From the NCBI RefSeq assembly GCF_001194135.2, contig NC_068986.1, forward strand, positions 47,732,510 to 47,767,392: a stretch of DNA of 34,883 nucleotides, in the 5' to 3' direction. Every line of letters begins with the position of its first letter. Position 1 is the stretch's first letter. The position numbers and the translations under genes were made by a program. Shown piece after piece: positions 1,397 to 34,883 of this stretch. Source of the stretch: Octopus bimaculoides. Its lineage: Eukaryota. The notes beneath the pieces were generated by a model, which worked only from the letters and a program-made list of their open reading frames with translations, searched no databases and had not been told where the DNA came from.

Positions 1397-1535
1397 GACG
1401 GGCTTCTTTCACTTTCCATCTACCAACTACCAAACCCACTCACAAGTCTTTGGCCTGCTCGAAGCTATAGTAGGAGACACTTTTCCAAGGTGCCGCGCAG
1501 TGCAATTGAACTCCGAACTATGTGGTTAGGGTGCA
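1396..1535 (-). mobile_element. 5' part of an abundant tRNA-type SINE (family A), next to (CA)n
   Basis: Reverse-complement similarity to the fuller copy at 8163-8583 (ccacatggtt...ttgggcaagtgtcttct...ctatagc...ttgtgagtg...gaaagaagccc). Confidence 0.75.
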
Positions 1536-4629: not shown

Positions 4630-4990
4630 TCCATTGTTTCACTCCTGCAAGAGTGAAGCAGAATGCGTTGGAGCAGATTTTTCTATGACCAGATATCCTT
4701 CCTGTCACCAACCCTCACTTGTTTCCAAGCACACGGTAATAGTTGAACATGTTTTTCACATAAGACTAGAAATGAACAGCCTTGCCTGTATGATTATGTC
4801 TCTCATTCACAGCCATCTTGTGATGTTTAGACAAGAGTACACACATACACACAGAATGGACTGCTTTCAATTCCCATCTACCAAATCCATTCGCAAGGCT
4901 TTTGTCAGCCCAATCCTATAGCAAAAGACACTTGCCCAGGGTGCTATGCAGTAGGACCCAACTCAAGAGCACATGATTGGGAAGTTAGTT
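4630..4990 (-). mobile_element. SINE family A copy (degenerate)
   Basis: ttcccatctaccaaatccattcgcaaggcttttgtcagccc...gacacttgcccagggtgc matches the reverse complement of 8163-8330. Confidence 0.65.
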
Positions 4991-5274
4991 TCTATCAGTA
5001 AATATTTAATTCCTCTATAAAATATTATAGAGTATTTTCAACAGCATGAGATAAAAATAAAATTATCTGGTTTCATTGTTACCTAACAACCCTTCAGGAT
5101 TAGTTTTCTTTTTTGACAGCAGTGGAAAACCACTTATTAAATTGTAAACCAGCATGTATGTTGTTACATTCTTAAACCTCCAATATCATAGTATGGTTGA
5201 TAAGTGTCGACGATAAAGAATTTTTTCTCTGCTGCTGTGAGCATGTAAACTGAATCACTGGTTTTGTACTTCCA

Positions 5275-5854
5275 TCTTGTGTAGCAAAACTATTCCTAAT
5301 CCATACTCCAAAGCATCAGATGCTACAACAAGGTCCATTTCAGGATTGAAATTCACTAGCAACAAATCTGTGATAAGAATTTTTTTTATTTCTTCAAACG
5401 TGTTTTGGCATTTAACCGACCATTTCCACTTTACTTCTTTTTTTAATAAGTCATTCAATGGAGCTCTTAGTTTGTACATGTTAGGAATGTAGTTCTGGTA
5501 GTAGTTTGCCATCCCAAGAAACGCTTGTAATGCTTTTATATTTGTCGGAGCAGGCATATTCTTTATTGTCTGCCCTTGGCAGGTCAGGCTGTCTACCATT
5601 TTTATCATTCATTTGCCCCTAAGTACCTAATTTGAGGCAAAAAAAGAATTCTCATTTTTTTCTTCACTCAAAGTGAACCTGTACTCTTTAATTTTCTTGA
5701 ACGCAGCTTTAATATGCTCCACATGCTGTTCATGCAAATTACTCTAAATCAATATAGTGTCCAAATAAGGGATTGCAAATACACAATCAGATAACATAGC
5801 ATCCATGATTTGCTGAAATATTGCCGGTGCAACCTTTTATCCAAAAAGTAAACC
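5275..5854 (-). mobile_element. Ty3/Gypsy LTR-retrotransposon pol remnant (RT C-half to RNase H start), antisense in intron 1
   Basis: The - strand translates as LLFG*KVAPAIFQQIMD...IPYLDTILI (YLDD-like)...IRYLG, then ALQAFLGMANYYQNYIPN...LRAPLNDLLKK...ASDALEYGLGIVLLH. It carries stops and frameshifts. Confidence 0.9.
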
Positions 5855-8922: not shown

Positions 8923-9300
8923 TTTACTTGTTTCAGTCATTTGACTGTGACCATGCTGGAGCACCACCTTTAGTTGAGCAAATCGACCCCAGGACTTATT
9001 CTTTGTAAGCCTAGTACTTATTCTATCGGTCTCTTTTGCCGAACTGCTACCAAATCCACTAACAAGGCTCTGGTCAGCCCAAGTTTATAGAAGACACTTG
9101 CCCAAGATGCCATACAGTGAGACTGTATCTGGAATAATGTTGTTGGAAAGCAAGCTTTTTATCACACAGCCACATGATGGGCTTCTTTCAGTTTCTGTCA
9201 ATGAAATCCATTCCCAAGGGTTTGCAGTGTGGGGTTATTGTAGGAGACACTTGCCTAAGGTGCTGTGCCGTGAAACTGAACCGGAGACCACTTGATTGGG
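8923..9300 (-). mobile_element. Stack of SINE family A fragments
   Basis: A 3' half (ttttacttgtttcagtcatttgact...) is followed by two successive 5' halves, each with gacacttgcc(c/t)aag. Confidence 0.7.
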
Positions 9301-9469
9301 AACATTATTCCATGACACTTTATGAGGGTTTCCCAAACGGATGAAAGGAAGAGTGAAAGTTATCCTCAAACAGGAAATGCACCCTGAATGTTTATAATAG
9401 AGCAAACTCCTCCAATAAAGGTACCTTAGGATTAGGTGGTAATGTTAAACTGGACAACAGGTAAGTTCA

Positions 9470-9678
9470 AAAACATGTCACATTTAATCCAGCCAAAATA
9501 TTCTACCAGTCTTATGTTAAAACTGACCACATCCAACCTCTCACACCTACCCTACAACATCATTCTATAAATTATGCAAACACACCGTTGAAATCTTGAA
9601 ACTACAAGATAATGCATGACTAATTCAAAATAATGTGAATAAATAAGCAATACATTTGACAAAGTGCTAAAGTGTTAA
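9470..9678 (+). mobile_element. piggyBac-like MITE family P1 (degenerate)
   Basis: Homologous to 12575-13006. It ends gctaaagtgTTAA. Confidence 0.7.
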
Positions 9679-12574: not shown

Positions 12575-13006
12575 TCTTTAGCATTTAAACCAACAAAATC
12601 CGGCTCAAATATTCTACATGTTTTACATTTAGATTGGCTATATCTGACTTCTCACATCTAACCTATGCTAATATTTTAAAAATAAATAATCAAATCATTG
12701 AAACCTCAAAACTATATGATGGTGCATGATTAATTCAAAACAATTTGAATAAAAAAACTATTACATTTGACTAAGTAATTTGAACGCTAAAGGGTTAAAC
12801 AGGCCATATGCAGCCCAAATATACTACTTGTTATATGTTCAAACAGGTGAGATCCAGCCTCTCACACCTACCCTGCAATGTCATTCTAAAAATCAGCAAT
12901 CACATTTTTGAAATTTCAAAGCTATGAGATGATACAGGATTAATCTTATAGAAATAAATATATAAGTATAACATTTGACAAAGTAATCTGAATGCTAAAG
13001 GGTTAA
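12575..13006 (+). mobile_element. Two head-to-tail piggyBac-like MITEs (family P1)
   Basis: Left end (c)ctttagcatt. The right ends aacgctaaaGGG-TTAA (12798) and aatgctaaaGGG-TTAA (13006) give CCC...GGG termini with TTAA. Confidence 0.75.
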
Positions 13007-13257: not shown

Positions 13258-13461
13258 ATGTGTAAACCAGCCATATCTGGGTCAAATATTCTGGCTGTTT
13301 TATGTTCAAATTGACAAGATTTAGCCTTTTACTCCTACCCTTCAATGTCCTAAAAATAAGCAATCACATCATGGAAATCTCAAAGCTAGAAGTTAATGAG
13401 TTATTCAAAATAATGTGAATAAAAGGGGATTACATTTGACAGGATAATCTGAATACTAAAA
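13258..13461 (+). mobile_element. piggyBac-like MITE family P1 (ends eroded)
   Basis: aaaccagccatatctgggtcaaatattct...tacatttgacaggataatctgaatactaaaa aligns by eye with 12799-13006. Confidence 0.7.
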
Positions 13462-14852: not shown

Positions 14853-16647
14853 ATGTGGAAAATGGCACCAAATGCCAAAATTCCAGACTCAAATGTAAAT
14901 GAAAAAATCCTAACAGACTTGCAAAACATAAAATCAGAAAAGCTCGAGAAGATACTCAACCCTACACTCGATACCAAGAGTGAAGACAACGAAAGCTCTC
15001 TTCCAGCATACAGCAACTGTGTAACATCATGGAAAAATTAATCAACTGCAAAACAGAATAAGATACACCACGCCTTACTAGAAGAAGCATAATCGGACAC
15101 GTTGGGAAAAAAAAAAAACTTTTAAGAACTAGAAAGTTTACAGTTTGGAACATGGTTAAAAACTTTAACAAATCTGGAATTAATGAGCCAGAACAATGAA
15201 GAAAACTACGAGAACAAATGTCCCTCAATAGAATAAGCATGGAAATTGAACTTTTAAAATTAAGAGCCACAACCAATGAACAAAAAATCAAAGATATCGA
15301 TCAACAAATAGAAGAAGAATATATACCAAAAAATGTGAGGGAACCAACTTGTAACACCTCAAACTCTGGAAACAAGATTATGAATATGCAGAGCTTATAT
15401 CTCTCCAACGATGGGGAAAATGTGAGATGTGGTTCCTTAAATACGAAGAGGATTTTTTAAACAATACGCATCACAGACAACTCTTTTATCAAAAAACAAA
15501 ACAAAACACGAAACCCTGCAGAAACAATCAGACCATCAAACACAAGACACCTGACCCACAAACACAGTTCCCCCAACCCAAACGAAATAAAACCCAACTG
15601 CAACCGAAGAAAAACCACACCCAACCACTACACAAATATTCTCCAAGTTTTTTCTCACAAATCCAAATCCAAATAAATCCAAAAACATCATAAATAACCT
15701 CAGCAATAACATCCAATTCACAATAGAGTTTAACCCCAAAGAACTTGCCTTTCTAGATATCCTAATCAAAAACCAAGATGAGAAAGTAGAAACAGACATA
15801 TTCTACAAACCGACCGACTCCAAACAGTACCTTCTTTTCACATCATATCACCGAAACACACCAAACTCAACATTCCCTTTAACCTGGCAAAGCAAATTTG
15901 TACCATATTATCAGAACCATCCAAACGAGAACAAAAACTAGAGGAACTGAAGGACACACTTATCTAAAGAGCCTTCCCTCCTGGCACAGTCACCAACAGA
16001 ATAAACAAGGCGAAATAAATGGATGTGAATGAACTTACGAAAACGAAAATAACAAAATGAGAAATGTCTTACCATTCGTATCAACCTTCAATTCCAGGAA
16101 CATCAAAATATTTGATCACATCCACAAAAACCTTCCCATCTTACTTGCAGATAAAAACACGAGGAAAATCTTAGAAAAACAACAAATCATCAAAAATAAA
16201 AGGCAGTCCACAACACTAAAACTCATTCTCACTGGAGCAAAAACACACAATGAAACCCTCAAGCCAACGGTCACAAAATGCGGAAGAACAAACCGCGAAT
16301 TTAAATTCAAAGATGGCCATACTTTCAAAGTCAAATCCAATTTCACCTGCAACACGGAAAACTTGATCTACGTAATCATATGCAATGGTTGCCAACATAA
16401 TTACATAGGTCAGACGGGTGGATCGTTACGCAACAGAATGACGACCCATCACCAACAGGTCCGAAGCAAAAGCACAAGAAAAATTCCTTCAAGCAGTCAC
16501 ATTGCAGCCTGTGCAGGAATGGTCTTACTTAGTTTCAAAATATTTCCCCTCTACAAGTGCTCAGATTCTCTCAATCAACAAGAAAGGCAATTTATCAACA
16601 AGTATAAACCACAATTAAATATAGAGCCAATCACAACCAATACATAA
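14853..16647 (+). mobile_element. Penelope-like retroelement remnant (N-terminal region, RT C-terminus/thumb, GIY-YIG endonuclease)
   Basis: NNIQFTIEFNPKELAFLDILI...TDIFYKPTDSKQYL...H(P)KHTKLNIPFNLAKQIC is PLE RT motif 6-7 and thumb. The ORF at 16057-16647 has FTCNTENLIYVIICNGCQHNYIGQT...RMTTH...E...INKYKPQLN (GIY-YIG). Several stops and frameshifts are present. Confidence 0.9.
16057..16647 (+). pseudogene. GIY-YIG endonuclease domain of the Penelope-like element
   Basis: LIY-x3-C-x2-C-x3-YIGQT, conserved Arg, His and Glu, and a terminal LN. It is separated from the RT by stops. Confidence 0.85.
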
Positions 16648-17189
16648 GAATAGATACTTAAAACAATTTTATACATATTGTTACCATTTAAAAAAAATAG
16701 TTCCCATCGTTTCTTAAATCTTTTTTCAATATTCATATATGCCAGAACACACACACACACGCACACACAAACATACACAAAAAAACATCACAAAAACACA
16801 CACACGCACAAACCCACATACAGAAAAAAGAAAACCACAAAAGCACATACACACACAGCTGGTGACCACACACATACACACAGGTGGAAACACTCAAATG
16901 AATACATCTAACCCAAGGAAAAATCCTAATTCTTTTTTCAACAAAATAAATTCTTCACAATTTACACACCTATCAACTCAGAGCTGGTGACGTCCTGTAC
17001 CCATATATGCATATGTATGTATATACGTACATATATATATTATATATTATTTATTATACATATATATATAATAAATAATATGTAATATATATCATATATT
17101 ATTTATTATATATATATATATAAATAATGTATGTATGTATGTATGATTTCATCTCGTAGGGCCTATTCAAGCCATCGACGATGGAGAAA

Positions 17190-17900: not shown

Positions 17901-18349
17901 AAAAACATTAGTACTTCAAGAGAAAAAGAATTGACAGTGTGTCTGCTGGCTTATCACATCTGAAAGGCAGGCAATAACATTTCTACTTCCTCTTTCTTGG
18001 TCACTTCTTTTACTATGACTGAAAGCAAGTAGTAAAAAATTCACTATCTGTTGACAACTTAACACGGCTGAAAGGAAAGCAGTAAAACATCTGCTTTCTG
18101 TCTTCCTCTTTCTTGACTGGTACAGTATTATATATATTTGAAACAATGGGGAGAGATGGCTTTTTTTGAAAGGATGATTTGTATTCTAATCTTAATAATA
18201 ATGTTTACAGTGAGTTACTCTGATATGAGTTTTGATCTTCAAATAGCCGTTTTCAAACTGAAAAATGTATGTTTTACTGGATTCTTAAAAAGCAAAAGAT
18301 TTTTTCTTACAAGTATACATACACAAAAATATACACAGAAAAAGAAAAG

Positions 18350-19803
18350 AGACCTTGATGCACCCGCCCTCTTTGCAATATACTTTGCTGTTGTGTTGTC
18401 ACACGCTTTTCAAAACTCTGAGGAGGGTATTTACATAAAATATCGAACAACAGGGTATGTTTTTAATCTAAGCAGACTGAAATTCAAAACGAAGGTTTTT
18501 ACTTCACTCATTAGGGAGCTTTTATACGCTGACGATTGCGATCTTGTCAGTCATTCTGAAACTGGTCTGCAATCCCTTGTATCTGCAGTTGACTCAGATT
18601 GTGATTATTTTCGCTTGATCACCAACTTGAAAAAAACAAACAAAAAAAAACCGGTTGTAATGCATCCTCCTGTGTGTGGTCCTGTTTGTAACCCCGCTAA
18701 AATTTTTGTTAAGGGAAAGTTACTTGAGGTTGTCGATTTGTTCGTCTACCTTGGAAGCTCTGTTCAAAATGTTGGAAATCTCGATACAGAAATACAGCTG
18801 CGAATTCAAAGGGCAGTAAAAGCATTTAGTGGCTTGGAGTCACGCGTTTGGTGCCAGCGACATATAAATAAGAATAAAAGGTGGCTCTTTACAAATCATT
18901 TCTCTTAACATCCCTGTTGTATTCCTGTGAAACTTGAACTTGTTATGAAAGGCATTTTAAACTGTTAGAACAATTCCACCAAAAATGCCTTCANNNNNNN
19001 NNNNNNNNNNNNNNNNNNNNNNNNNNNNNNNNNNNNNNNNNNNNNNNNNNNNNNNNNNNNNNNNNNNNNNNNNNNNNNNNNNNNNNNNNNNNNNNNNNNN
19101 NNNNNNNNNNNNNNNNNNNNNNNNNNNNNNNNNNNNNNNNNNNNNNNNNNNNNNNNNNNNNNNNNNNNNNNNNNNNNNNNNNNNNNNNNNNNNNNNNNNN
19201 NNNNNNNNNNNNNNNNNNNNNNNNNNNNNNNNNNNNNNNNNNNNNNNNNNNNNNNNNNNNNNNNNNNNNNNNNGTTACTTGGAATGGTTCCAGAAGATAT
19301 AGAAACTCTTAATTCGGATCGAGTTGGATGGCGAACAAAGGTGTGGAGTAGAGTGAAAGCATTTGAATTGGCCAGGATAACGCAAGTAAGACTCAAAAGA
19401 AATCTAAGGAAGAATGTAACGATCAAGAAGGTGAATGACAATGATCTTTTGTGTGCACAGTCTGTGACAAATCATGCCTGTCTTTTGCTGGCCTCAAATC
19501 TCATCTGCGAACGCATGGAAAACGAACCCCCACTAACTACCTTGCCTATATGTCTGTGGACACCTTTGAATGCAGTGTATGCCAGAAGGTCTGCAAATCC
19601 AACGGAGGCCTCAAAAGACATGTTAAGATCCACAAAGAGCAGGACTTATCTGCAGGTCATGGTGGTCCAAATCAGAGGTGCAAGCTATGTGGGTGCCTAT
19701 TCAGAACATTATCTGGTTTAAAAAGTCACATCAGACGCCATGATGGTACTGGGGTGTAGGTACAGGAGGTGGTCAAACTCTGTATAAGGAGTAGACAACC
19801 ACT
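18350..19803 (+). mobile_element. 5'-truncated RTE-clade LINE (RT, C-terminal region, three C2H2 zinc fingers), interrupted by an N gap
   Basis: APALFAIYF...FNLSRLKFKTKV...ELLYADDCDLVSHSE...FVYLGS...EIQLRIQRA, then LLYSCET*...FHQKCL. After the gap come SDRVGWR and three CxxC-x12-HxxxH fingers. It ends in (TA)n. Confidence 0.92.
19451..19759 (+). pseudogene. Triple C2H2 zinc-finger tail of the RTE ORF (frameshifted near 19450)
   Basis: CTVC-x12-HLRTH, CSVC-x12-HVKIH and CKLC-x12-HIRRH, with no TGEKP linkers. Confidence 0.85.
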
Positions 19804-21034: not shown

Positions 21035-21044
21035 NNNNNNNNNN

Positions 21045-21248
21045 CGTGTTTTTGTGTCTGTGTTTGTCACTCCACTATCGCTTGTCAACCGATGTTGGTA
21101 TGTTTATGTCCCCGAAACTTAGCGTTATATATTTAATATATGTATGCATACATATATTAAATATATAACGCTAAGTTTCGGGGACATAAACATACCAACA
21201 TCGGTTGACAAGCGATAGTGGAGTGACAAACACAGACACAAAAACACG
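21045..21248. repeat. Perfect 204-bp palindrome made of SINE family A sequence, abutting a 10-N gap
   Basis: The arms are exact reverse complements by eye, centred on atg|cat at 21146/21147. Confidence 0.95.
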
Positions 21249-21339
21249 TTCACATAAATAAATATACATGTATATATACACGACATGCATCTATCAGTTT
21301 CCATCTACCAAATCTAGTCCCAAGGCTGTGGTCGAACCG

Positions 21340-21382
<43 letters not shown>

Positions 21383-23087
21383 GCCCGCCTGCACAGAGAT
21401 GTGCAGTACCTTTGTGCTGGGGTTGATGTATGTGTGTGTGTGTGTGTGAGAGAGTGAGTGAGCAAAGTTCATTGCTCGTCTGGAAGTTGACAGCAGGCTA
21501 TACAGGTGTTTACAGAACAGGTGCATTTTTAAAGTTTGTTTTTATATAGATACAAAAATGGGTAAGTAGTGAAAAGGTGCATTTCAGAAACATATGGTTT
21601 TTGGTTCAGTCTTAACGCATTGCACTTTTGCCAAGTATCTTGTGCTATAGCTCATGCAATACTTGTGTGTGTATGTGTGTCTGTCCGCGTGTTCGTCTTC
21701 TATCACTTAATAACTGGTATCTGTCTAAGTTTCATAACGTAGCAATTCAGTCAAAAGAGTTCAATAGCATAATACCAGACTCAGCTAAATAAATAAATGA
21801 GATCTAAGATCAAATTGATCACCTAAATTTTTCAGGCAGTGCAATACAGTGACTGAAAAGAAAAAAAAATGTAAGTGTGGGTGTAGGAGCAACAGTTATG
21901 CCACAGTATGGTCTTGACTGTGATGGTTAAAATAAACTGAAGAGTGTATGATATTGCAATATGTGTATATAGTTTTATGTAGTGGAGAAACAGCCAAGAT
22001 GAAATATCAGGCAACTTAAACTACATAAGACACACACGCATACAAATGATTGTTGTTTTTTTCAATGGCGTTTGAGGAGGACGGGCTGTGTCTCTCCCTT
22101 TGTCTGGACTTTTGAGAATAGCAGTAGGAAGTTATCCTTAGTCAAGAAATCAAGAGATACTTCTGCAATATGTGATTTCATCTATGGTGGTTGCGTTGGG
22201 TTGTTGACTGCTTGTAAAGGATAAACAATACTCACGAACAATCAGCAGAAGCTATTTTTAGCACACATAATTGTTTAATCATTTGCCATGTTGACCTTTG
22301 GATGAAGAATGAATACAATAATTTATACACATTAGGAGAAACAAAACACTGGAATCTACAACGAAATAGCTTGAACGTATAGACCTGTTATCAGGCCATC
22401 TCAACAGAAGAAATATCGTGCTAAATTCATGATGGCAGATCTGTACCTTCAATCAGAATGGAAACATGAGTATGGAGTTGTTAAAACAACTGTCTCGGCA
22501 TCTTGTATCTACTGCAAGCGACTGGAGAATGAAATGAGAATGGAGTTGTCACCACAACACACTTGACAATTACTACCAAAAATTCGCCTTTTTGTATCCC
22601 TGATGACTTGATATTGATTGCTCAACAAACTGGCCGATCACGTGAAATGGCTGTGATTGGGCCGTGACGCTTACTCAGCTATTCGGCGTTTCAATTTTGA
22701 ATTTTTTACGCTTGCAATAAAACAGACTTCATTAAAGGCATTCAAGGGTCATGTGGTGGTGTTAAACTGGACAATGGATTTAAGCATGCCCCCAGGAAAC
22801 AGAACCAAACTACCTCTGATCGTTTTTTCTTCCACAGTCTCCATCTACTAAATTCCATACAAAGTTTTTGGTAGAACGGCTAGCTATTGTAGGAAATACT
22901 TGCCTAAGATGCTACTCAGCGGGATCAAACATAGGGTCAGGTAACTGTGAAGCGAACTGCTCTGTCGTACAACCACACCTGTGTGTTGTTAATGATAGGA
23001 TTTTGAACCATTTACCTTTTAACCAGTAGGCTGAAAACTCAGCTGTTCCTCTTGACCTTTATTTCATGTTAGTATATGTATTGCATA

Positions 23088-23945
23088 AAGGCAGCGAGTT
23101 GGCAGATTCGTTGCTATGTCAGACAAAGTGCTTAACGGCATTTCATCCGTTTTCATGATCTGAGTTCAAACTCCACCGAGGTCGACTTTGCCTTTTATGC
23201 TTTTGGAGTCGATAAAATAAGTAACTGTTGAATACGAGTCGGTGTAATCGGCTTACCACTCCTCTGAAATTGCTGACCGTATACCAAAATTTGAAATTAA
23301 TACATATGTTCCACAAAGGCAGTGAGTTGGCCGAGTCGTTAGCACACGGGACAAAATACTTAGTGACATCTCTTCAGGTCTAACGTTCTGTGATCAAATT
23401 CCGCCGAGGTCTACTTTGCCTTTCTTCTTTTCGGGGTTGGTTGATAAAATAAGCACTAGCTGAACACCACGACCGACGTAGTCGACTAACCCACCTCACC
23501 GTAAATTTTAAACCATGTGTCTGTAGAGGAAAGAAATATATATGTTACAGTGGGCGGCGAACTCATAGAATCGTTGCTGATTAGGGGCATTTCTTCCGGC
23601 TGTTTATGCTTAGAGTGCAAATATCGCCGAGATAAATTTTGCTTTTCATCTTTCGGAGTCGATAAAATAAGTACCTGTTAAGCATTGGAGTCAATGTACT
23701 TGACTCCTCCTGTTCACTTAAAATTGCTGGCCTTGTGCCAAATTAGAAAATATGTATGCGTTCCATCTTTAGAGATAGGCGAGGGAGGGCTTAGCAGAAT
23801 GCATAAAGCGTTGGACAAAATGTGTTGTCATATACAATTTCATTTCTTTGCGTTCTGATCTCGAATTTTCACCAAATCGACTCAGCCTTTCATTCTTCCG
23901 AAGCAAACAAAATATGTAGCAATCAAGTAATTTTGTTGAGGTGGG
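23088..23945 (+). mobile_element. Tandem array of four SINE family B copies
   Basis: Heads start at about 23088, 23316, 23551 and 23776 (aaggcagcgagttggcaga-type). Each has a ttcaaat...ccgaggtcgactttgcc...gtcgataaaataagta-like block. Confidence 0.85.
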
Positions 23946-28739: not shown

Positions 28740-29654
28740 ACGTATATACATATATATACGACGGTCTTCTTCCAGTTTCCGTCTACTAAATCCACTCACA
28801 AGACTTTGGTCTGGCCGAGGCTATTGTAAAAAAATACTTTCCCAAGGTACCAAGCAGAGGGATTGAACCCAGAACCATGTGGTTAGAAAACAAGCTTCTT
28901 ACCACAGAGTCACGCTTATAATAATTTATTATATGTTATGCACTTCACTGTGTTTTGGTATGCGCATTTCCCCCTTGTCCGAAAAGAGGTCCATGATGCA
29001 AAAAGAAAGACAAGGGATCGCTCCTTTATGTTACTCAGAATGTACGAAATTAGGGTTAACTAAAAGTCTGAAAACAAACATGGATGTTTAGGTCTAACAA
29101 ATGAAAATGCTTTGGACCGGCTAAGGGTTAATCATTGCAACGTACATGTCTCTCATTCATCATTCTCTCCCCCCCCCTCTCTTTCAGGTCTCGAACATGG
29201 ATGCATAACAAAGAAGTTTTCTATTTTTATTATTTTTTTCCGTGTTGTCAGTTCTACTTCTCTGAAGTCGTTCACCTCTGATTGATATTTGTAACATTAA
29301 AAAATAAAACTTGCTGAATGAGAACATTCGTCAATTTATTTCTTATACTTTAAAGCTGTGCTTAGTTTTTCTCATCAACATCTAGTCAACAACCTACCAT
29401 CAAAAATGTCATTGTTGTTGACTCACCTTCAGTTTGTAATACTTCAGCGTTGTATATTTATTAGCTTCATTTAATCTCGATAGTAATGAAGTAAAAAAGT
29501 TCATATGAACACGAAAAATATATACGCAATAAAATTGAAAGCTTAATATAAAATGCAGAAACACGAAAAGCACTTTGTTGTATGCATGTATGCATGTATG
29601 CATATTTATGTGTGTGTGTGAATACATATATGTTTGTACGTAGGTATGTATGCA

Positions 29655-30030
29655 ATTATTCAGTTTTATTTCAAGATTTCTTGCCAATAGAGAAAGAGCC
29701 GGTTTCTAACCTAGGTCCAAGGCTCCTTCACTGGAATTTCAACAACATCAACAGGGTATTTTTGAATATACGTATATATGCAGAATTGAATGTTTTGTTT
29801 TTATAGTGAAGGTTTGTTGCCGACTTAATGTGGCAGTCCCAGTATGCAACTGCTTTTTAGCCCCAGGAAACACCGTTTCCAGCTGGCTATGTGACACAAG
29901 CGTGCTGTGTCCTTATGTTTTCAAACAGGGGAGATAAGCACCTCCACCTAGCAAAGCCATCATCCAGAGACTAGTTTCAGAGTCATTGCTCTTCACCAGT
30001 CAGGAGTAGTTTGGCTCGCTAGTTGAATTT
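29655..30030 (-). mobile_element. Composite non-coding element: hammerhead + about 165-nt middle + R4/Dong-like LINE 3' tail ending in (CATA)n
   Basis: 29655-29796 is the reverse-complement homologue of the LINE 3' UTR at about 33045-33191. The hammerhead is at 29963-30005 on the same strand. Confidence 0.6.
29963..30005 (-). ncRNA. Minimal type I hammerhead ribozyme (one core substitution)
   Basis: TCCTGA / CTGGTGA / AGAG-CAATGA-CTCT / GAAA / C-TA-G / TC / TCTGGA. Stem I 5 of 6 bp, stem II 4 bp, palindromic CTAG stem III, GUC cleavage triplet. Confidence 0.75.
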
Positions 30031-31134
30031 TTTATTATGATTATAAGAAATCTTACACAGATGGAGACATTACAAGACATTACAAATACATTTTCTTGCT
30101 CTGTTAAAGTATTTGAGAAAAATTATATTAATGTGTTCAACTGATAAAAATTCTATTTATTTGTGCAGCCGACGATAGCTCTGCATTTAAATTGATGTAA
30201 TGATTGCATTGTTCAATTCTTGATATCCTGTTGCTTATTTTGATTATATATATATANNNNNNNNNNNNNNNNNNNNNNNNNNNNNNNNNNNNNNNNNNNN
30301 NNNNNNNNNNNNNNNNNNNNNNNNNNNNNNNNNNNNNNNNNNNNNNNNNNNNNNNNNNNNNNNNNNNNNNNNNNNNNNNNNNNNNNNNNNNNNNNNNNNN
30401 NNNNNNNNNNNNNNNNNNNNNNNNNNNNNNNNNNNNNNNNNNNNNNNNNNNNNNNNNNNNNNNNNNNNNNNNNNNNNNNNNNNNNNNNNNNNNNNNNNNN
30501 NNNNNNNNNNNNNNNNNNNNNNNNNNNNNNNNNNNNNNNNNNNNNNNNNNNNNNNNNNNNNNNNNNNNNNNNNNNNNNNNNNNNNNNNNNNNNNNNNNNN
30601 NNNNNNNNNNNNNNNNNNNNNNNNNNNNNNNNNNNNNNNNNNNNNNNNNNNNNNNNNNNNNNNNNNNNNNNNNNNNNNNNNNNNNNNNNNNNNNNNNNNN
30701 NNNNNNNNNNNNNNNNNNNNNNNNNNNNNNNNNNNNNNNNNNNNNNNNNNNNNNNNNNNNNNNNNNNNNNNNNNNNNNNNNNNNNNNNNNNNNNNNNNNN
30801 NNNNNNNNNNNNNNNNNNNNNNNNNNNNNNNNNNNNNNNNNNNNNNNNNNNNNNNNNNNNNNNNNNNNNNNNNNNNNNNNNNNNNNNNNNNNNNNNNNNN
30901 NNNNNNNNNNNNNNNNNNNNNNNNNNNNNNNNNNNNNNNNNNNNNNNNNNNNNNNNNNNNNNNNNNNNNNNNNNNNNNNNNNNNNNNNNNNNNNNNNNNN
31001 NNNNNNNNNNNNNNNNNNNNNNNNNNNNNNNNNNNNNNNNNNNNNNNNNNNNNNNNNNNNNNNNNNNNNNNNNNNNNNNNNNNNNNNNNNNNNNNNNNNN
31101 NNNNNNNNNNNNNNNNNNNNNNNNNNNNNNNNNN

Positions 31135-31640
31135 TGTCTGAAAACGGCTCCAAAATCTGGCGCATGCATTCTTCACTGCGTCTCTGGGAAGATCCTGAAA
31201 CATACTCTTAATCCGGGCCACCAGTTCGGCCTCGGTGTTGCAGGTAGAGCGGTCGATGTCTTTCTCAACCGTGCTCCACACATTGTGATCCATGTGATTA
31301 CAATCCGAGAAATTAGGCCAGAATTTGGAGATGGTGAAGTCGTAGAAATTTTCTGACAATCACTTCAGATTCTTTTCGGAGGTATGGCTACGAGCCGATT
31401 CCTGTGCTACATGCATAGCCTTCCAGCTGCAATCCTCTTCAGCCTGTGATTGATTACTGTATCCAACAGCTTTACATAGCTGCATGCCCTGTTCAAAGAT
31501 GAAATCCGGCCGGTGGACTCGATCAGAATGCCCGCTGTGTCCCTTCTTGCTAACTACAATTTGGTAGTCTCCGTTGCAGCTGCTCCATGACTCCTTTACA
31601 ATGCAGCCTTTACAATGACCACAGAGCATTGAGTAGCAGT
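31135..31640 (-). mobile_element. Internally deleted DD37D (maT-type) Tc1/mariner transposase remnant
   Basis: AQESARSHTSEKNLK*LSENFYDF...WPNFSDCNHMDHNVWS is a decayed QQDSAPCH...WPPNSPDxNPxDY. The spacing is 36 here, i.e. 37 with one codon lost. Confidence 0.82.
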
Positions 31641-31849
31641 CATGATGTCGGCATTTGACAGCTGGTGAGAGTCATAATGATACAGGTGACTCTTATTCAA
31701 TATTCACATGGCTTCTAGCCCTCCATTTGAGCTAATTGTTTCTCAACTACAACTTTAAACTCTATGCTCTCTCACGCTGTTGAGCGTTCACTAATATATC
31801 AAACTTTTCCTAAAAAAGCAGGTATATATAGAGAGAGAAGGCATTTGGC

Positions 31850-32716: not shown

Positions 32717-32869
32717 CTTAATTTCGTAAACATTTTACGTAGGTAAAAAAATACAAATACCAATTTTGAATTAAAGGTCTTTTTTAATGATTGGCAGATA
32801 CACAATATCGATACTTCATATACATACATACATACATACATACATACATACATACATACATACATACGT

Positions 32870-33191
32870 ATCAATTTTGAGAAATTAGGCTTCTCAAAAC
32901 CTGAAAGGAGAAAGCTGATTCGAAGACTACAGATCCAATCCATCACTGGAACTGTTCAAATCTATAAAACTTTCCAGTTTATCATTTAAATATACATGAG
33001 CATGTCTAGATATGCAAGTATATGCATGAGAAGGCATACATAAAAAATACAATTCTGCACATATACATACATACATGCATACAAAAATACCCTGTTGTTG
33101 ATGTTGAAATTCCAATGAAGGAGTCTTTGATCTAGCTTAGGAACCGGCTTTTTCTCTTCTGGCAAGAAATCTTGAAATAAAACTGAATAAT
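32870..33191 (+). mobile_element. 5'-truncated R4/Dong-like LINE 3' end inside a (TACA)n microsatellite
   Basis: The in-frame C-terminus FEKLGFSKPERRKLIRRLQIQSITGTVQIYKTFQFII* (stop 32987-32989) resembles REL-LINE ends (LQK-x2-I-x-GT-x2-I). It is followed by a 200-nt 3' UTR and a CATA-type tail. Confidence 0.7.
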
Positions 33192-33222
33192 TACATGCAT
33201 ACATACACACACATACAAATCG

Positions 33223-33297
<75 letters not shown>

Positions 33298-34111
33298 CAT
33301 ATAAGAGATACAAGGAGTTTTCGTCAGGGTGACTCGAACCAGTCTGTATGCGTTCTGGGTACTCATATAGATATGCCAATAAAATTCCGGTTTGAATAGC
33401 AGTTGAAGTTGTGATTTTGTGACTGCTTTATTCAAAACAACTAGAAGTGGCTTACCCTTGAGTCAGTAAGTATAGGTTAAAGTTAAAATGGAAAGGCAAA
33501 CAATTTGGCAAGACTTGACATAAACATTTATTCTAACTTTTTCCCGTCATCGAAGAAAGATAGGTTAAACATATGTAACAGAGGAAGGAAGCTCCTCGTT
33601 AATGATAGTTGTTGTGGCTCATTATGTCCAGAAATGCAGGAGAAATCAAAGTAAATCCAGTTAGATCGAGTATTCCTTATGTAAATCCATGATGAGAGAG
33701 AACGTTTAAATAGTAATCCATACCGAGGGGAAATGGATGGGTCCCAAAATTTGGCAAATAATGAGAGGAGGAATAAATACAGTACATTGTGGTGGGGGAA
33801 AGACAGGCAGTTAAGAGTTTTGTATTGGATATATACTAATCAGTACAGCGAGTGGTACACAACTATCATAAATGAGGAACTTTCTTCCATTGTTACATAT
33901 GTTTAAGCTATGCCACTCGGATGACAGGATACTCAGATTATGGAATCTTCACTCGATATGATGTTGTAATAGTTGGGATATCCTAGAAACAGCTATCATA
34001 GGTTATGTCTATCTTTCATTATATAGCTAAATTAAATTAAATTAAATGTCTTTGTCAAGTCTTGGTAAATTGCTTGCCTTTCCTTTCTACTTTAACCTGT
34101 ATGTATATATA

Positions 34112-34790
34112 CAAGGTGCGAAACATATTTGAGGACATACCCTTTTTGGGTCATTGCTACATCTTTGCTAACTCTGTATAATCTTTGTTTCAGAAAATAA
34201 TAATGGCAGACCCTCAGATTACTCAAGAAATAAAGATATATGCTGTTATTGTGGTTATAAACACTGAGCATAATGATTTAGAAATATTTTGATTTTTAAA
34301 ACTTGCCAGATCTTTCGTCTACAAAGTTTGTACGGAGCTAGAGACTGAAGATGGAAACGTATCACCAGTATCAAAGCATAAAAAGCATTCTAAACGCCCT
34401 GAAATCTTCAGAACACCTGAATTTATCCAGCAAGTTCAACAGACGATTGATTACAATCCCAGAAAGTCCATAAGATCAGTTGCAAAAGATCTCCATGTGT
34501 CAGAAGGAACAGTCAGAAATGTGGTCCACAAAGACATCAGATATAAAACTTATATGATAAGGAAAGGTCAATTTGTCAGAAAAAAAGCAGAAGAAAATCA
34601 CTACATAAGATTTAAAAGGCTCTTAAACAAATTTAAAAATCCAGCAGAAGATTTGATTTGGTTTTTCTCAAACGAGGAAAAAGTTAACAAAAGAAATGAC
34701 AGATGGTTATGTGCAGACCCTTCTGAAGTTCCAAGTGTTATGCATACAAAATTTCCTGAAACTGTCATAGTTTTAGGGGTTGTCAGCAAT
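34112..34790 (+). mobile_element. 5' half of a DD37D (maT-type) transposon
   Basis: TA-caaggtgcg TIR start and ATG at 34203: MADPQITQE...RTPEFIQQV...NPRKSIRSVAKDLHVSEGTVRNVV...WFFSNE...NKRNDRWL...HTKFPETVIVLGVVS. One in-frame stop; SDE has decayed to SNE. Confidence 0.88.
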
Positions 34791-34850
34791 TACAGATACT
34801 CCATGATCGATACTTCCCAAAATTTCACTCCTAAGCTATTAGCGTGGTTC

Positions 34851-34883
<33 letters not shown>

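What the first reader, a model, noticed from the sequence alone, without database searches (positions are those of the whole stretch)
29655..30030. Candidate ribozyme-containing non-autonomous retroelement: a hammerhead joined to an R4/Dong LINE 3' tail
Seen on the - strand: a complete minimal type I hammerhead (only CUGAUGA changed to CUGGUGA and one stem-I mismatch), predicted cleavage between 29969 and 29968, about 165 nt of non-coding sequence, then about 140 nt homologous to the 3' UTR of the LINE copy at 32870-33191, ending at the same point in a (CATA)n tail. Established: R2/R4-type LINEs are known to use HDV-like 5' ribozymes and spawn short internally deleted derivatives, while minimal hammerheads are typical of Penelope elements and retrozymes. 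SINEs borrow LINE 3' tails for mobilisation. Inference: a Pol III-independent SINE-like RNA of about 315 nt, released from read-through transcripts by hammerhead cleavage and retrotransposed by a Dong-like LINE into (TACA)n. I do not know of this hammerhead + REL-LINE-tail pairing having been described.
Basis: partly seen in the sequence, partly recalled or inferred. Interest (0 to 1): 0.8.

Follow-up and report, generated by a model that had tools for sequence, protein, structure and literature searches.

The report
Decayed hammerhead fused to LINE tail
A worn-out copy of a self-cutting RNA motif (a hammerhead ribozyme) sits directly in front of the tail end of a jumping gene (a LINE); both pieces are real, but whether they form a new kind of mobile element could not be tested here, and the proposed way of working has a logical flaw.

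Summary
Both observations hold. On the - strand, 30022-29948 has the full architecture of a canonical animal type I hammerhead. Helix I has 6 bp plus an internal loop and an 11-bp closing stem. Helix II has 4 bp with a 6-nt loop. Helix III is the palindrome ACUAGU, and the cut falls at 29969|29968. It has three defects: G at core position 6, a U.U in helix I, and A-U at 10.1-11.1. No Rfam hammerhead model scores it, and its lowest-energy fold is an inactive hairpin. It heads a 216-nt GC-rich block (30022-29807). That block abuts the last ~150 nt of a LINE 3' end (29806-29654), which is 90% identical over 110 nt to the copy at 33083-33192. Both end at the same base before (ACAT)-like repeats.

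A type I hammerhead cuts 3' of its own core, so an RNA released by it would lack the ribozyme. This copy keeps the core, so it was not made from cleaved RNA.

The best reading is one dead composite retrocopy made by the LINE machinery.

The parts
29948..30022 (-). Complete hammerhead domain (type I). Closing stem 30022-30012 with 29959-29948. Internal loop 1. Helix I 30005-30000 with 29968-29963. Core CUGGUGA 29999-29993. Helix II and loop 29992-29979. GAAA 29978-29975. Palindromic helix III ACUAGU 29975-29970. C17 at 29969, predicted cut 29969|29968.
   Evidence: Direct reading plus scripts. Chance estimates. The lowest-energy fold is -30.5 kcal/mol, an alternative hairpin, against -19.1 for the hammerhead-compatible fold.
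29807..29947 (-). It is non-coding, has no relative in the window, and forms several hairpins.
   Evidence: GC is 0.50 against 0.25-0.30 in both flanks. There is no other copy in the window. It shows no similarity to the LINE ORF end or UTR or to L003-L006. The 207-nt stretch 30022-29816 folds at -68.6 kcal/mol, z = -2.3.
29779..29806 (-). Last 28 nt of the LINE 3' UTR, part A (CTATAAAAACAAAACATTCAATTCTGCA). This is where homology to the LINE begins.
   Evidence: It aligns with + ~33035-33062 and with the UTR end of the related LINE in L003.
29764..29778 (-). Short degenerate internal microsatellite, matching (ACAT)-like 33063-33082 in the + copy.
29654..29763 (-). LINE 3' module B, 110 nt, ending in CTGAATAATT.
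   Evidence: 99/110 identical to + 33083-33192. Both copies end at the same base.
29575..29653 (-). (ACAT/GCAT)-like microsatellite after the tail. It is either the element's own tail or the target.
   Evidence: The below-threshold Rfam mir-297 hit here is a repeat artefact.
32870..33192 (+). Reference 5'-truncated LINE copy. ORF end 32870-32986, stop 32987-32989, then UTR part A to about 33062, internal (ACAT)-like repeat 33063-33082, and module B 33083-33192. It is flanked by (ACAT)12 at 32818-32868 and by ACAT-like repeats after 33192.
   Evidence: The ORF end matches P0003 (E = 8e-5, 65% identity). DNA is 73-80% identical to L003-L006 over 32874-33082. In those loci the UTR ends at CAATTCTGCAC followed by (ACCT)n, with no module B.

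Best explanation
The stretch 30022-29654 (- strand) is one old, dead composite retrocopy.

Its 3' 153 nt are the terminal part of a microsatellite-tailed LINE 3' UTR, probably of the REL-endonuclease type. This part was copied by that LINE's reverse transcriptase, primed at an (ACAT)n-type site.

Its 5' 216 nt are a GC-rich RNA that opens with a canonical animal type I hammerhead domain. This is the kind carried by non-LTR retrozymes and related repeats.

The hammerhead is a passenger, inherited only because the template RNA was not cut, or was cut and bridged. It did not create the 5' end of this copy. It cannot act as a heritable 5'-processing ribozyme, because it cuts downstream of its own core.

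Shown: the two parts, their exact junction, the shared 3' terminus, and the damaged core.

Inferred: that both parts entered together, and that the LINE enzyme made the copy.

Open: whether the head-tail fusion is a replicating SINE-like family (my estimate about 0.3-0.35) or a one-off chimera from template switching (about 0.3).
For: - Hammerhead architecture with an extended helix I. It matches the published definition of canonical animal type I motifs: helix I 6 bp, helix II 4 bp, helix III 1-2 bp with a palindromic loop (PMC4209133; PMC7229834).
- Tail: 90% identity over 110 nt, and the same end point as the LINE copy.
- LINE nature of the donor.
- The GC-rich block and the LINE part together sit between two AT-rich flanks (GC 0.25 and 0.30). 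The block does not resume beyond the tail. This fits one insertion better than a LINE landing inside an older repeat.
- There is no microsatellite at the internal junction 29807/29806, whereas the plain truncated LINE copy has (ACAT)12 at its 5' junction.
- Topology argument: the core at 29999-29975 lies upstream of the cut at 29969|29968. The same loss-on-cleavage problem is described for schistosome hammerhead SINEs (PMC6765202).
- R2-type reverse transcriptases copy across discontinuous templates (Bibillo & Eickbush 2002, seen only in the reference list of PMC6765202; the rest is established knowledge).
Against: - Only one copy was seen, and no genome-wide data were available.
- No target-site duplication and no defined 5' boundary.
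- No Rfam hammerhead hit.
- The core has G at position 6 and A-U at 10.1-11.1, so the identification rests on architecture, not on a scored model.
- An 878-N gap lies 234 nt upstream. It could hide tandem copies or a parent element.
- Co-insertion is inferred from base composition only.
Confidence: 0.55

Rival explanations
1. A Pol III-independent SINE-like family whose ~315-nt transposition intermediate is released from read-through transcripts by cleavage at 29969|29968, then copied by the Dong-like LINE.
For: A hammerhead domain and a LINE tail lie in one block, and the 315-nt distance fits small retroposons. Animal hammerhead repeats are proposed to be mobilised by 'LINEs or PLEs' (PMC7229834). 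If the window is from an octopus (unverified), such genomes hold about 900 unclassified SINE families and active Dong-R4 LINEs (PMC13282606).
Against: The cleaved RNA would lack the ribozyme core, so copies could not inherit it. This very copy retains the core and 54 nt upstream of the cut. The weak helix III implies activity only as a dimer (PMC4209133; PMC7229834), and no second motif lies within reach. This copy's core is mutated and mis-folded.
Confidence: 0.07
2. Chance adjacency. An older hammerhead-bearing repeat (a retrozyme monomer or a Penelope-related fragment) happened to lie next to a site where an ordinary 5'-truncated 153-nt LINE copy later inserted.
For: 5'-truncated copies of this LINE exist 3.2 kb away. 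Solitary retrozyme monomers are common in other animals (10.64898/2026.07.22.740005). A Penelope-like remnant with a GIY-YIG domain is in the window. No target-site duplication brackets the composite.
Against: There is no (ACAT)n at the LINE fragment's 5' junction, unlike the other copy. The GC-rich block ends exactly at the junction and does not resume after the tail.
Confidence: 0.2
3. SIDE-like internally deleted LINE. The 216-nt block is the LINE's own 5' UTR, joined by deletion to its 3' end, as in the short internally deleted elements of R2.
For: R2 SIDEs keep the 5' ribozyme and 3' end of the parent (PMC6765202). The block starts exactly at the base of the hammerhead domain.
Against: No full-length LINE was available. 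The last ~1.4 kb of the related LINE (L003) shows no similarity to the block. A type I hammerhead at a 5' end would remove itself on cleavage.
Confidence: 0.08
4. Not a hammerhead at all. The domain is an imperfect 75-nt hairpin that mimics the motif by chance.
For: No Rfam hammerhead match. The lowest-energy fold is a plain long hairpin, -30.5 kcal/mol against -19.1 for the hammerhead-compatible fold. There are three departures from consensus. My descriptor was written after seeing the site. Genome-wide, about one such chance case is conceivable (extrapolated).
Against: 10 of 11 invariant core positions are present in the right register, with the helix lengths, loop size and palindromic helix III typical of animal type I motifs. 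The joint chance is about 1.6e-5 per window.
Confidence: 0.1

Closest known systems
Canonical type I hammerheads of animal non-LTR retrozymes (newt satellite 2, axolotl HHR_Amex1, coral and mussel repeats)
   Same: Type I topology, helix I of 6 bp with an internal loop, and helix II of 4 bp with a small loop. Helix III is one A-U pair capped by a palindromic tetraloop, implying action as a dimer. The surrounding unit is a few hundred nt (PMC4209133, PMC7229834).
   Different: A single copy rather than a tandem array. The core carries G at position 6 and A-U at 10.1-11.1. The unit ends in a LINE 3' UTR and microsatellite, which retrozymes are not reported to have. GC of 0.48-0.50 is at the upper edge of the reported range.
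Schistosome Sm-alpha / Sj-alpha SINE-like elements with a hammerhead
   Same: A short non-autonomous retroposon carrying a type I hammerhead. Cleavage separates the ribozyme or promoter part from the rest, so single copies cannot propagate (PMC6765202).
   Different: Sm-alpha has a tRNA-like Pol III promoter and occurs in tandem. Here ARAGORN found no tRNA-like part and a region-wide Rfam scan matched no tRNA family. No tandem partner was found. A LINE-derived tail is present.
Classical SINEs with LINE-derived 3' tails (including mollusc SINEs with multiple LINE partners)
   Same: A 3' end shared with a partner LINE, ending at the same base and the same kind of simple repeat.
   Different: The head is not derived from tRNA, 5S, 7SL or snRNA. 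Family status is unproven.
R2 SIDEs and the HDV-like 5' ribozymes of R2, RTE and L1Tc
   Same: A ribozyme at the 5' side and a LINE 3' end in a short non-coding element of a REL-endonuclease LINE lineage.
   Different: HDV-like ribozymes cut at their own 5' edge and remain on the element. A type I hammerhead cuts at its 3' edge and is lost.
Chimeric retrocopies from template switching by LINE reverse transcriptases (for example U6-L1 chimeras, R2 template jumps)
   Same: A LINE 3' part is fused at a sharp junction, without target sequence between, to an abundant structured cellular RNA.
   Different: The acceptor RNA would be a hammerhead-bearing repeat transcript. This has not been reported, and it is not shown here.

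Membership tests
Hammerhead ribozyme, type I (canonical animal architecture) | Invariant core C3 U4 G5 A6 N7 G8 A9 ... G12 A13 A14 A15.1 ... U16.1 H17 | tested here: not met
   10 of 11 invariant positions are present. Position 6 is G (29996). From established mutational work, which I recall rather than re-checked here, changes at A6 strongly reduce cleavage.
Hammerhead ribozyme, type I (canonical animal architecture) | Three helices around the core with helix I open. Helix I about 6 bp, helix II about 4 bp, helix III 1-2 bp with a small palindromic loop (PMC4209133). | tested here: met
   Helix I has 5/6 pairs plus an 11-bp closing stem. Helix II is 4 bp with a 6-nt loop. Helix III is A-[CUAG]-U, i.e. 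the palindrome ACUAGU. The self-duplex of the palindrome is -6.2 kcal/mol.
Hammerhead ribozyme, type I (canonical animal architecture) | Conserved G10.1-C11.1 pair | tested here: not met
   A-U at 29992/29979.
Hammerhead ribozyme, type I (canonical animal architecture) | Scores with the curated covariance models (Rfam hammerhead families) | tested here: not met
   No hammerhead hit at gathering score on the window, at E<=10 on 901 nt, or on 81 nt.
Hammerhead ribozyme, type I (canonical animal architecture) | Self-cleavage | not testable with these tools
   Needs in vitro transcription of monomer and dimer. Folding predicts that an inactive hairpin is favoured by 11 kcal/mol in this copy.
Animal non-LTR retrozyme | Head-to-tail tandem repeats of 150-450 bp, each with a type I hammerhead | tested here: not met
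   Only one motif in 34.9 kb, and no internal repeat. An 878-N gap 234 nt upstream prevents full exclusion.
Animal non-LTR retrozyme | Low GC (<45-50%) and expression as linear and circular RNA | tested here: inconclusive
   The block's GC is 0.48-0.50.
SINE with LINE-derived tail | 3' end homologous to, and co-terminal with, a LINE of the same genome | tested here: met
   99/110 identity in module B plus the 28-nt UTR-A end. Same last base and same type of repeat after it.
SINE with LINE-derived tail | Many copies with a fixed head-tail junction | not testable with these tools
   No eukaryotic genome or read set was reachable. The protein-database tricks were uninformative because the database holds almost nothing from this organism. 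The collection scans found nothing.
SINE with LINE-derived tail | Head derived from a small RNA with an internal Pol III promoter | tested here: not met
   ARAGORN found no tRNA in the window. No tRNA, 5S, 7SL or snRNA family matched in 29400-30300 at E<=10.
R4/Dong clade LINE (donor of the tail) | RT followed by a C-terminal REL (PD-(D/E)xK) endonuclease; clade placement by RT phylogeny | tested here: inconclusive
   The window has only the last 39 codons. The one relative, P0003, shows KPDIIIWD...ISSPADISV...K..EK..Y by eye. There was no Pfam or PDB match. No RT was available for a tree.
R4/Dong clade LINE (donor of the tail) | Simple-repeat 3' tail and insertion into simple repeats | tested here: met
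   The + copy is flanked by (ACAT)12 and ACAT-like repeats. The related element in L003 ends in (ACCT)n.
Penelope-like element pLTR mini-hammerhead | [quoted passage not shown] | tested here: not met
   Helix II is 4 bp, helix I is 6 bp, and there is no extra nucleotide. The only PLE remnant (GIY-YIG, 16033-16644, + strand) is 13 kb away on the other strand.

The most novel reading that the evidence does not exclude
The fusion is the founder or a member of a real SINE-like family. Its head would be a retrozyme-type hammerhead RNA and its tail the 3' module of an R4/Dong-like LINE. That would be the first direct evidence that animal hammerhead repeats can be mobilised by a LINE rather than only by Penelope-like elements.

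A speculative extension follows. The unusually long helix I (6 + 11 bp) could hold the 54-nt ribozyme fragment on the cleaved RNA. A template-jumping REL-LINE reverse transcriptase could then copy across the nick and regenerate the ribozyme in new copies.
Probability: 0.3. Interest if true: 0.7.

Novelty: new member of a known kind. Interest (0 to 1): 0.4.

Why it matters
Who mobilises animal hammerhead repeats is an open question. The 2020 description named 'LINEs or PLEs' (PMC7229834). A 2026 preprint argues for Penelope-like elements (10.64898/2026.07.22.740005). A hammerhead head welded to a LINE's own 3' recognition module would make LINE mobilisation directly testable, if it proves to be a family.

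If it is a single chimera, it is still a small natural record that a REL-type LINE enzyme copied a hammerhead RNA. As it stands, this is one decayed copy of two known kinds of sequence. The specific mechanism proposed for it does not work as stated.

Tried and rejected
- Rfam search for a hammerhead at three stringencies: none found.
- Search for other copies of the hammerhead or the block inside the window: none.
- Fishing for other genomic copies through ORFs called on non-coding DNA. An 83-aa read-through of the - frame found no candidate. Both negatives are uninformative, because the database holds almost nothing from this organism. A 204-aa GIY-YIG ORF found only two hits, at 38-45% identity. 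The window's own ORFs are not on record.
- Loci L001 and L002, fetched through the Penelope-like ORF, share no DNA with the window and contain no hammerhead.
- Exact-pattern scans with the tail and the hammerhead: metagenome contigs, viral contigs and prokaryote genomes all returned zero.
So read depth, RNA ends and circular RNA could not be examined.
- Similarity of the block to the LINE ORF end or UTR was not above shuffles.
- Target-site duplication search found nothing longer than 8 nt.
- Clade assignment of the LINE through Pfam and PDB gave no matches.
- Sequence-string searches of the literature returned only primers or nothing.
- Rejected idea: that the motif is the Penelope-type 'minimal' hammerhead. 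The helix lengths do not fit.
- Rejected idea: that the mir-297 hit at 29586-29658 is a microRNA. It is a simple-repeat artefact, 56 bits against a gathering score of 90.

Full report
**What the window is.** The window is a draft eukaryotic scaffold with six runs of N and about 35% GC. It is crowded with simple repeats and transposon debris:
- a Penelope-like remnant with a GIY-YIG domain at 16033-16644 (+) (Pfam 1.4e-7)
- a LINE RT fragment and C2H2 fingers at 18117-19756
- a gypsy RT/RNase H piece at 5258-5608 (-)
- Tc1/mariner-like pieces at 31135-31671 (-) and 34293-34883 (+)
- a repeat family that looks like a tRNA-derived SINE by eye (D15/D16/D18); ARAGORN calls no tRNA in the window

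From memory these features resemble octopus genomes. No tool confirmed the organism, so everything that depends on that is marked as unverified.

**The hammerhead, checked.** On the - strand the sequence reads ...CUAGCGAGCCA AAACUAC UCCUGA CUGGUGA AGAG CAAUGA CUCU GAAA CUAG UC | UCUGGA UGA UGGCUUUGCUAG....
- Helix I is 30005-30000 with 29968-29963, with 5 of 6 pairs and U.U at 30002/29966.
- The core is at 29999-29993, with G at 29996 instead of A6.
- Helix II is 4 bp with a 6-nt loop.
- GAAA is at 29978-29975.
- A15.1 to U16.1 enclose CUAG, so ACUAGU is a 6-nt palindrome.

First, helix I continues beyond an internal loop into an 11-bp closing stem (30022-30012 with 29959-29948, -16.2 kcal/mol). 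Second, the 10.1-11.1 pair is A-U rather than the usual G-C.

By the definitions of Cervera and de la Pena (PMC4209133), this is the canonical animal type I architecture: helix I 6 bp, helix II 4 bp, helix III 1-2 bp with a small palindromic loop. It is not the Penelope-type minimal motif, which has helix II of 7-8 bp, helix I of 4-5 bp and an extra nucleotide after position 9. A helix III of one pair capped by a palindromic tetraloop is what is described for newt and axolotl hammerheads that work only as dimers (PMC7229834). From memory of the Schistosoma hammerhead, a 6-nt loop 2 beginning CAA and a UAC just 5' of helix I are also familiar. That is a lead, not a test.

**Is it more than chance?** A relaxed descriptor finds exactly this one site in the window. 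It allows one core mismatch, helix II of at least 4 bp, GAAA, a palindromic or hairpin helix III, and helix I with at least 5 of 6 pairs. In 300 random sequences with the window's dinucleotide make-up, it is expected 0.013 times per window, and never with an exact core. Flanks pairing as well as the closing stem occur in 0.12% of equally spaced window segments. Taken as independent (my inference), that is about 1.6e-5 per window.

Two cautions apply. The descriptor was written after seeing the site. Over a genome of a few Gb, about one such chance case is conceivable.

Against the motif, no Rfam hammerhead model matches at any threshold tried. In addition, the lowest-energy fold of the 79-nt domain is a plain hairpin in which GACUGGU pairs with ACUAGUC. 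That fold is -30.5 kcal/mol, against -19.1 for the hammerhead-compatible fold. With A at position 6 the competing fold drops to -24.6.

I conclude that this is very probably (about 0.9) a real but decayed hammerhead, and that this copy is unlikely to cleave.

**The tail, checked.** The - strand 29806-29654 matches the + strand ~33035-33192 (I1, 11, 48, 80). The match is composite:
- 28 nt of UTR end (29806-29779)
- a short degenerate repeat (29778-29764)
- a 110-nt module (29763-29654) that is 99/110 identical to 33083-33192

Both copies stop at ...CTGAATAATT and run into (A/G)CAT repeats.

The + copy begins with an open 39-codon ORF end (32870-32986) and is preceded by (ACAT)12. A full HMMER scan of 1.84 billion representative proteins found one relative, P0003 (E = 8.3e-5, 65% identity). 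P0003 is a 105-aa product from four Logan contigs of runs SRR11869384-94. By eye it carries KPDIIIWD...ISSPADISV...K..EK..Y, which looks like a REL-type endonuclease. Neither Pfam nor PDB sequences confirm this.

At the DNA level these contigs align to 32874-33082 at 73-80% identity. They show the related element ending at CAATTCTGCAC followed by (ACCT)n, without the 110-nt module. So the tail donor is a simple-repeat-tailed LINE, plausibly of the REL-endonuclease group. 'R4/Dong' itself remains untested. In this genome the LINE's 3' end is bipartite.

**The junction and the block.** The hammerhead domain opens a 216-nt block (30022-29807) with GC 0.48-0.50. Both outer flanks are AT-rich (0.25 upstream, 0.30 downstream of the repeat), and the block does not resume beyond the tail.
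- The block has no other copy in the window.
- It has no similarity to the LINE's ORF end or UTR above shuffles, and none to L003-L006.
- It has no tRNA-like part.
- It is moderately structured (z = -2.3).
- There is no simple repeat at the block/LINE junction, whereas the ordinary truncated LINE copy has (ACAT)12 at its 5' junction.
- No target-site duplication brackets any plausible unit.

Composition and junction therefore favour one composite insertion over two independent ones. This is an inference.

**How it most likely works.** The shared, co-terminal 3' module says that the LINE's reverse transcriptase primed on this RNA end, as for SINEs and truncated LINE copies (established knowledge).

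A type I hammerhead cuts after position 17, at the 3' edge of the ribozyme. The downstream product, starting at 29968, carries only the 3' strand of helix I. Copies made from it would have no ribozyme. This locus retains the whole core plus 54 nt upstream, so its template was uncleaved.

The contrast with R2 matters here. HDV-like ribozymes cut at their own 5' edge and stay on the element. The same propagation problem is described for schistosome hammerhead SINEs, where single copies lose the ability to propagate and tandem pairs are needed (PMC6765202). The weak helix III also means little cleavage without a second motif, and none is nearby.

My best account (0.55) is a dead composite retrocopy: a hammerhead-bearing, retrozyme-type RNA as head and the LINE 3' module as tail, with the hammerhead as a passenger. 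Two origins are about equally likely and could not be separated:
- a replicating SINE-like family
- a one-off chimera from template switching, for which R2-type enzymes are known and for which abundant retrozyme RNAs would be likely partners (PMC7229834)

The rivals, with my estimates:
- chance adjacency of two insertions (0.2)
- a chance hammerhead look-alike (0.1)
- a SIDE-like deleted LINE whose 5' UTR is the block (0.08)

**Comparison with what is known.** The closest relatives in kind are:
- canonical hammerheads of animal non-LTR retrozymes: same ribozyme architecture, but those are tandem and have no LINE tail
- Sm-alpha elements: a hammerhead in a SINE-like element, but with a tRNA-type promoter and in tandem
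- LINE-tailed SINEs: same tail logic, different head
- R2 SIDEs: a ribozyme plus a LINE 3' end, but a ribozyme of the opposite polarity of use

In the literature library searched, no paper combined hammerhead ribozymes with LINE-derived SINE tails. That is absence in an open-access library, not proof of novelty.

**What could not be done.** The public collections that could be scanned gave nothing. The protein database holds almost nothing from this organism, so the negative ORF searches carry no weight. The decisive test, copy number and constancy of the 29807/29806 junction, therefore remains open.

**Verdict.** The best-supported reading is a new member of known kinds, with interest 0.4. 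If a family with this head-tail junction exists (about 0.3), it would be a new SINE variant, would bear directly on who mobilises animal hammerhead repeats, and would deserve about 0.7.

Noticed in passing
window 21045-21248: A perfect 102 + 102 nt inverted repeat with no spacer, starting right after a 10-N gap (21035-21044). It is probably an assembly or gap-filling artefact rather than biology (I2).
   Followed up: no
window 33063-33192 versus L003 1570-1613: The LINE's 3' end is bipartite in this genome: UTR, then an internal (ACAT)-like repeat, then a 110-nt module, then repeat. The related element in other runs ends right after the UTR with (ACCT)n. The 110-nt module may be an acquired second tail or a nested short element.
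   Followed up: partly
window 15200-16650 (+): A frameshifted Penelope-like remnant with a GIY-YIG domain in a very A-rich stretch (AT skew 0.33-0.37). No hammerhead was detectable next to it.
   Followed up: partly
window 18117-18905 and 19445-19756 (+): A LINE RT fragment (weak RVT_1 match, YADD motif). After a 280-N gap it is followed by three C2H2 zinc fingers on the same strand. This is an unusual order if they belong to one element.
   Followed up: no
window 1414-1532, 4865-4983, 9034-9302, 21292-21350, 22885-22951, 28770-28889: A repeat family of about 120 nt that looks like a tRNA-derived SINE by eye (...GACACTTGCCCAAGGTGCC...GAACC...), 61-78% alike (D15/D16/D18). ARAGORN calls no tRNA. 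It reminded me of octopus SINEs, but this is unverified.
   Followed up: no
window 9487-9613, 12598-12723, 12808-12933, 13275-13397: Four copies of another ~130-nt interspersed repeat, 66-81% alike (D14/D20).
   Followed up: no
window 3816, 23187, 23415, 23637, 23882, 26333 (43 nt each): Six copies of a short motif, TTTGCCTTT..GGAGTCGATAAAATAAGTA. Four of them are spaced about 230 nt apart at 23187-23924, suggesting a short tandem or clustered repeat (D17).
   Followed up: no
window 33542-33612 / 33859-33929: A 71-nt inverted repeat, 80% complementary, with 246 nt between the arms. It is MITE-like (I18).
   Followed up: no
window 29586-29658: A below-threshold Rfam mir-297 hit (56 bits against a gathering score of 90). 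It lies wholly in the (GCAT/ACAT) repeat after the tail and is a simple-repeat artefact.
   Followed up: yes
window 31135-31671 (-) and gap 30257-31134: The C-terminal part of a Tc1/mariner-like transposase runs into the 878-N gap, which ends 234 nt upstream (on the - strand) of the hammerhead domain. So the true upstream neighbour of the hammerhead block is unknown.
   Followed up: partly
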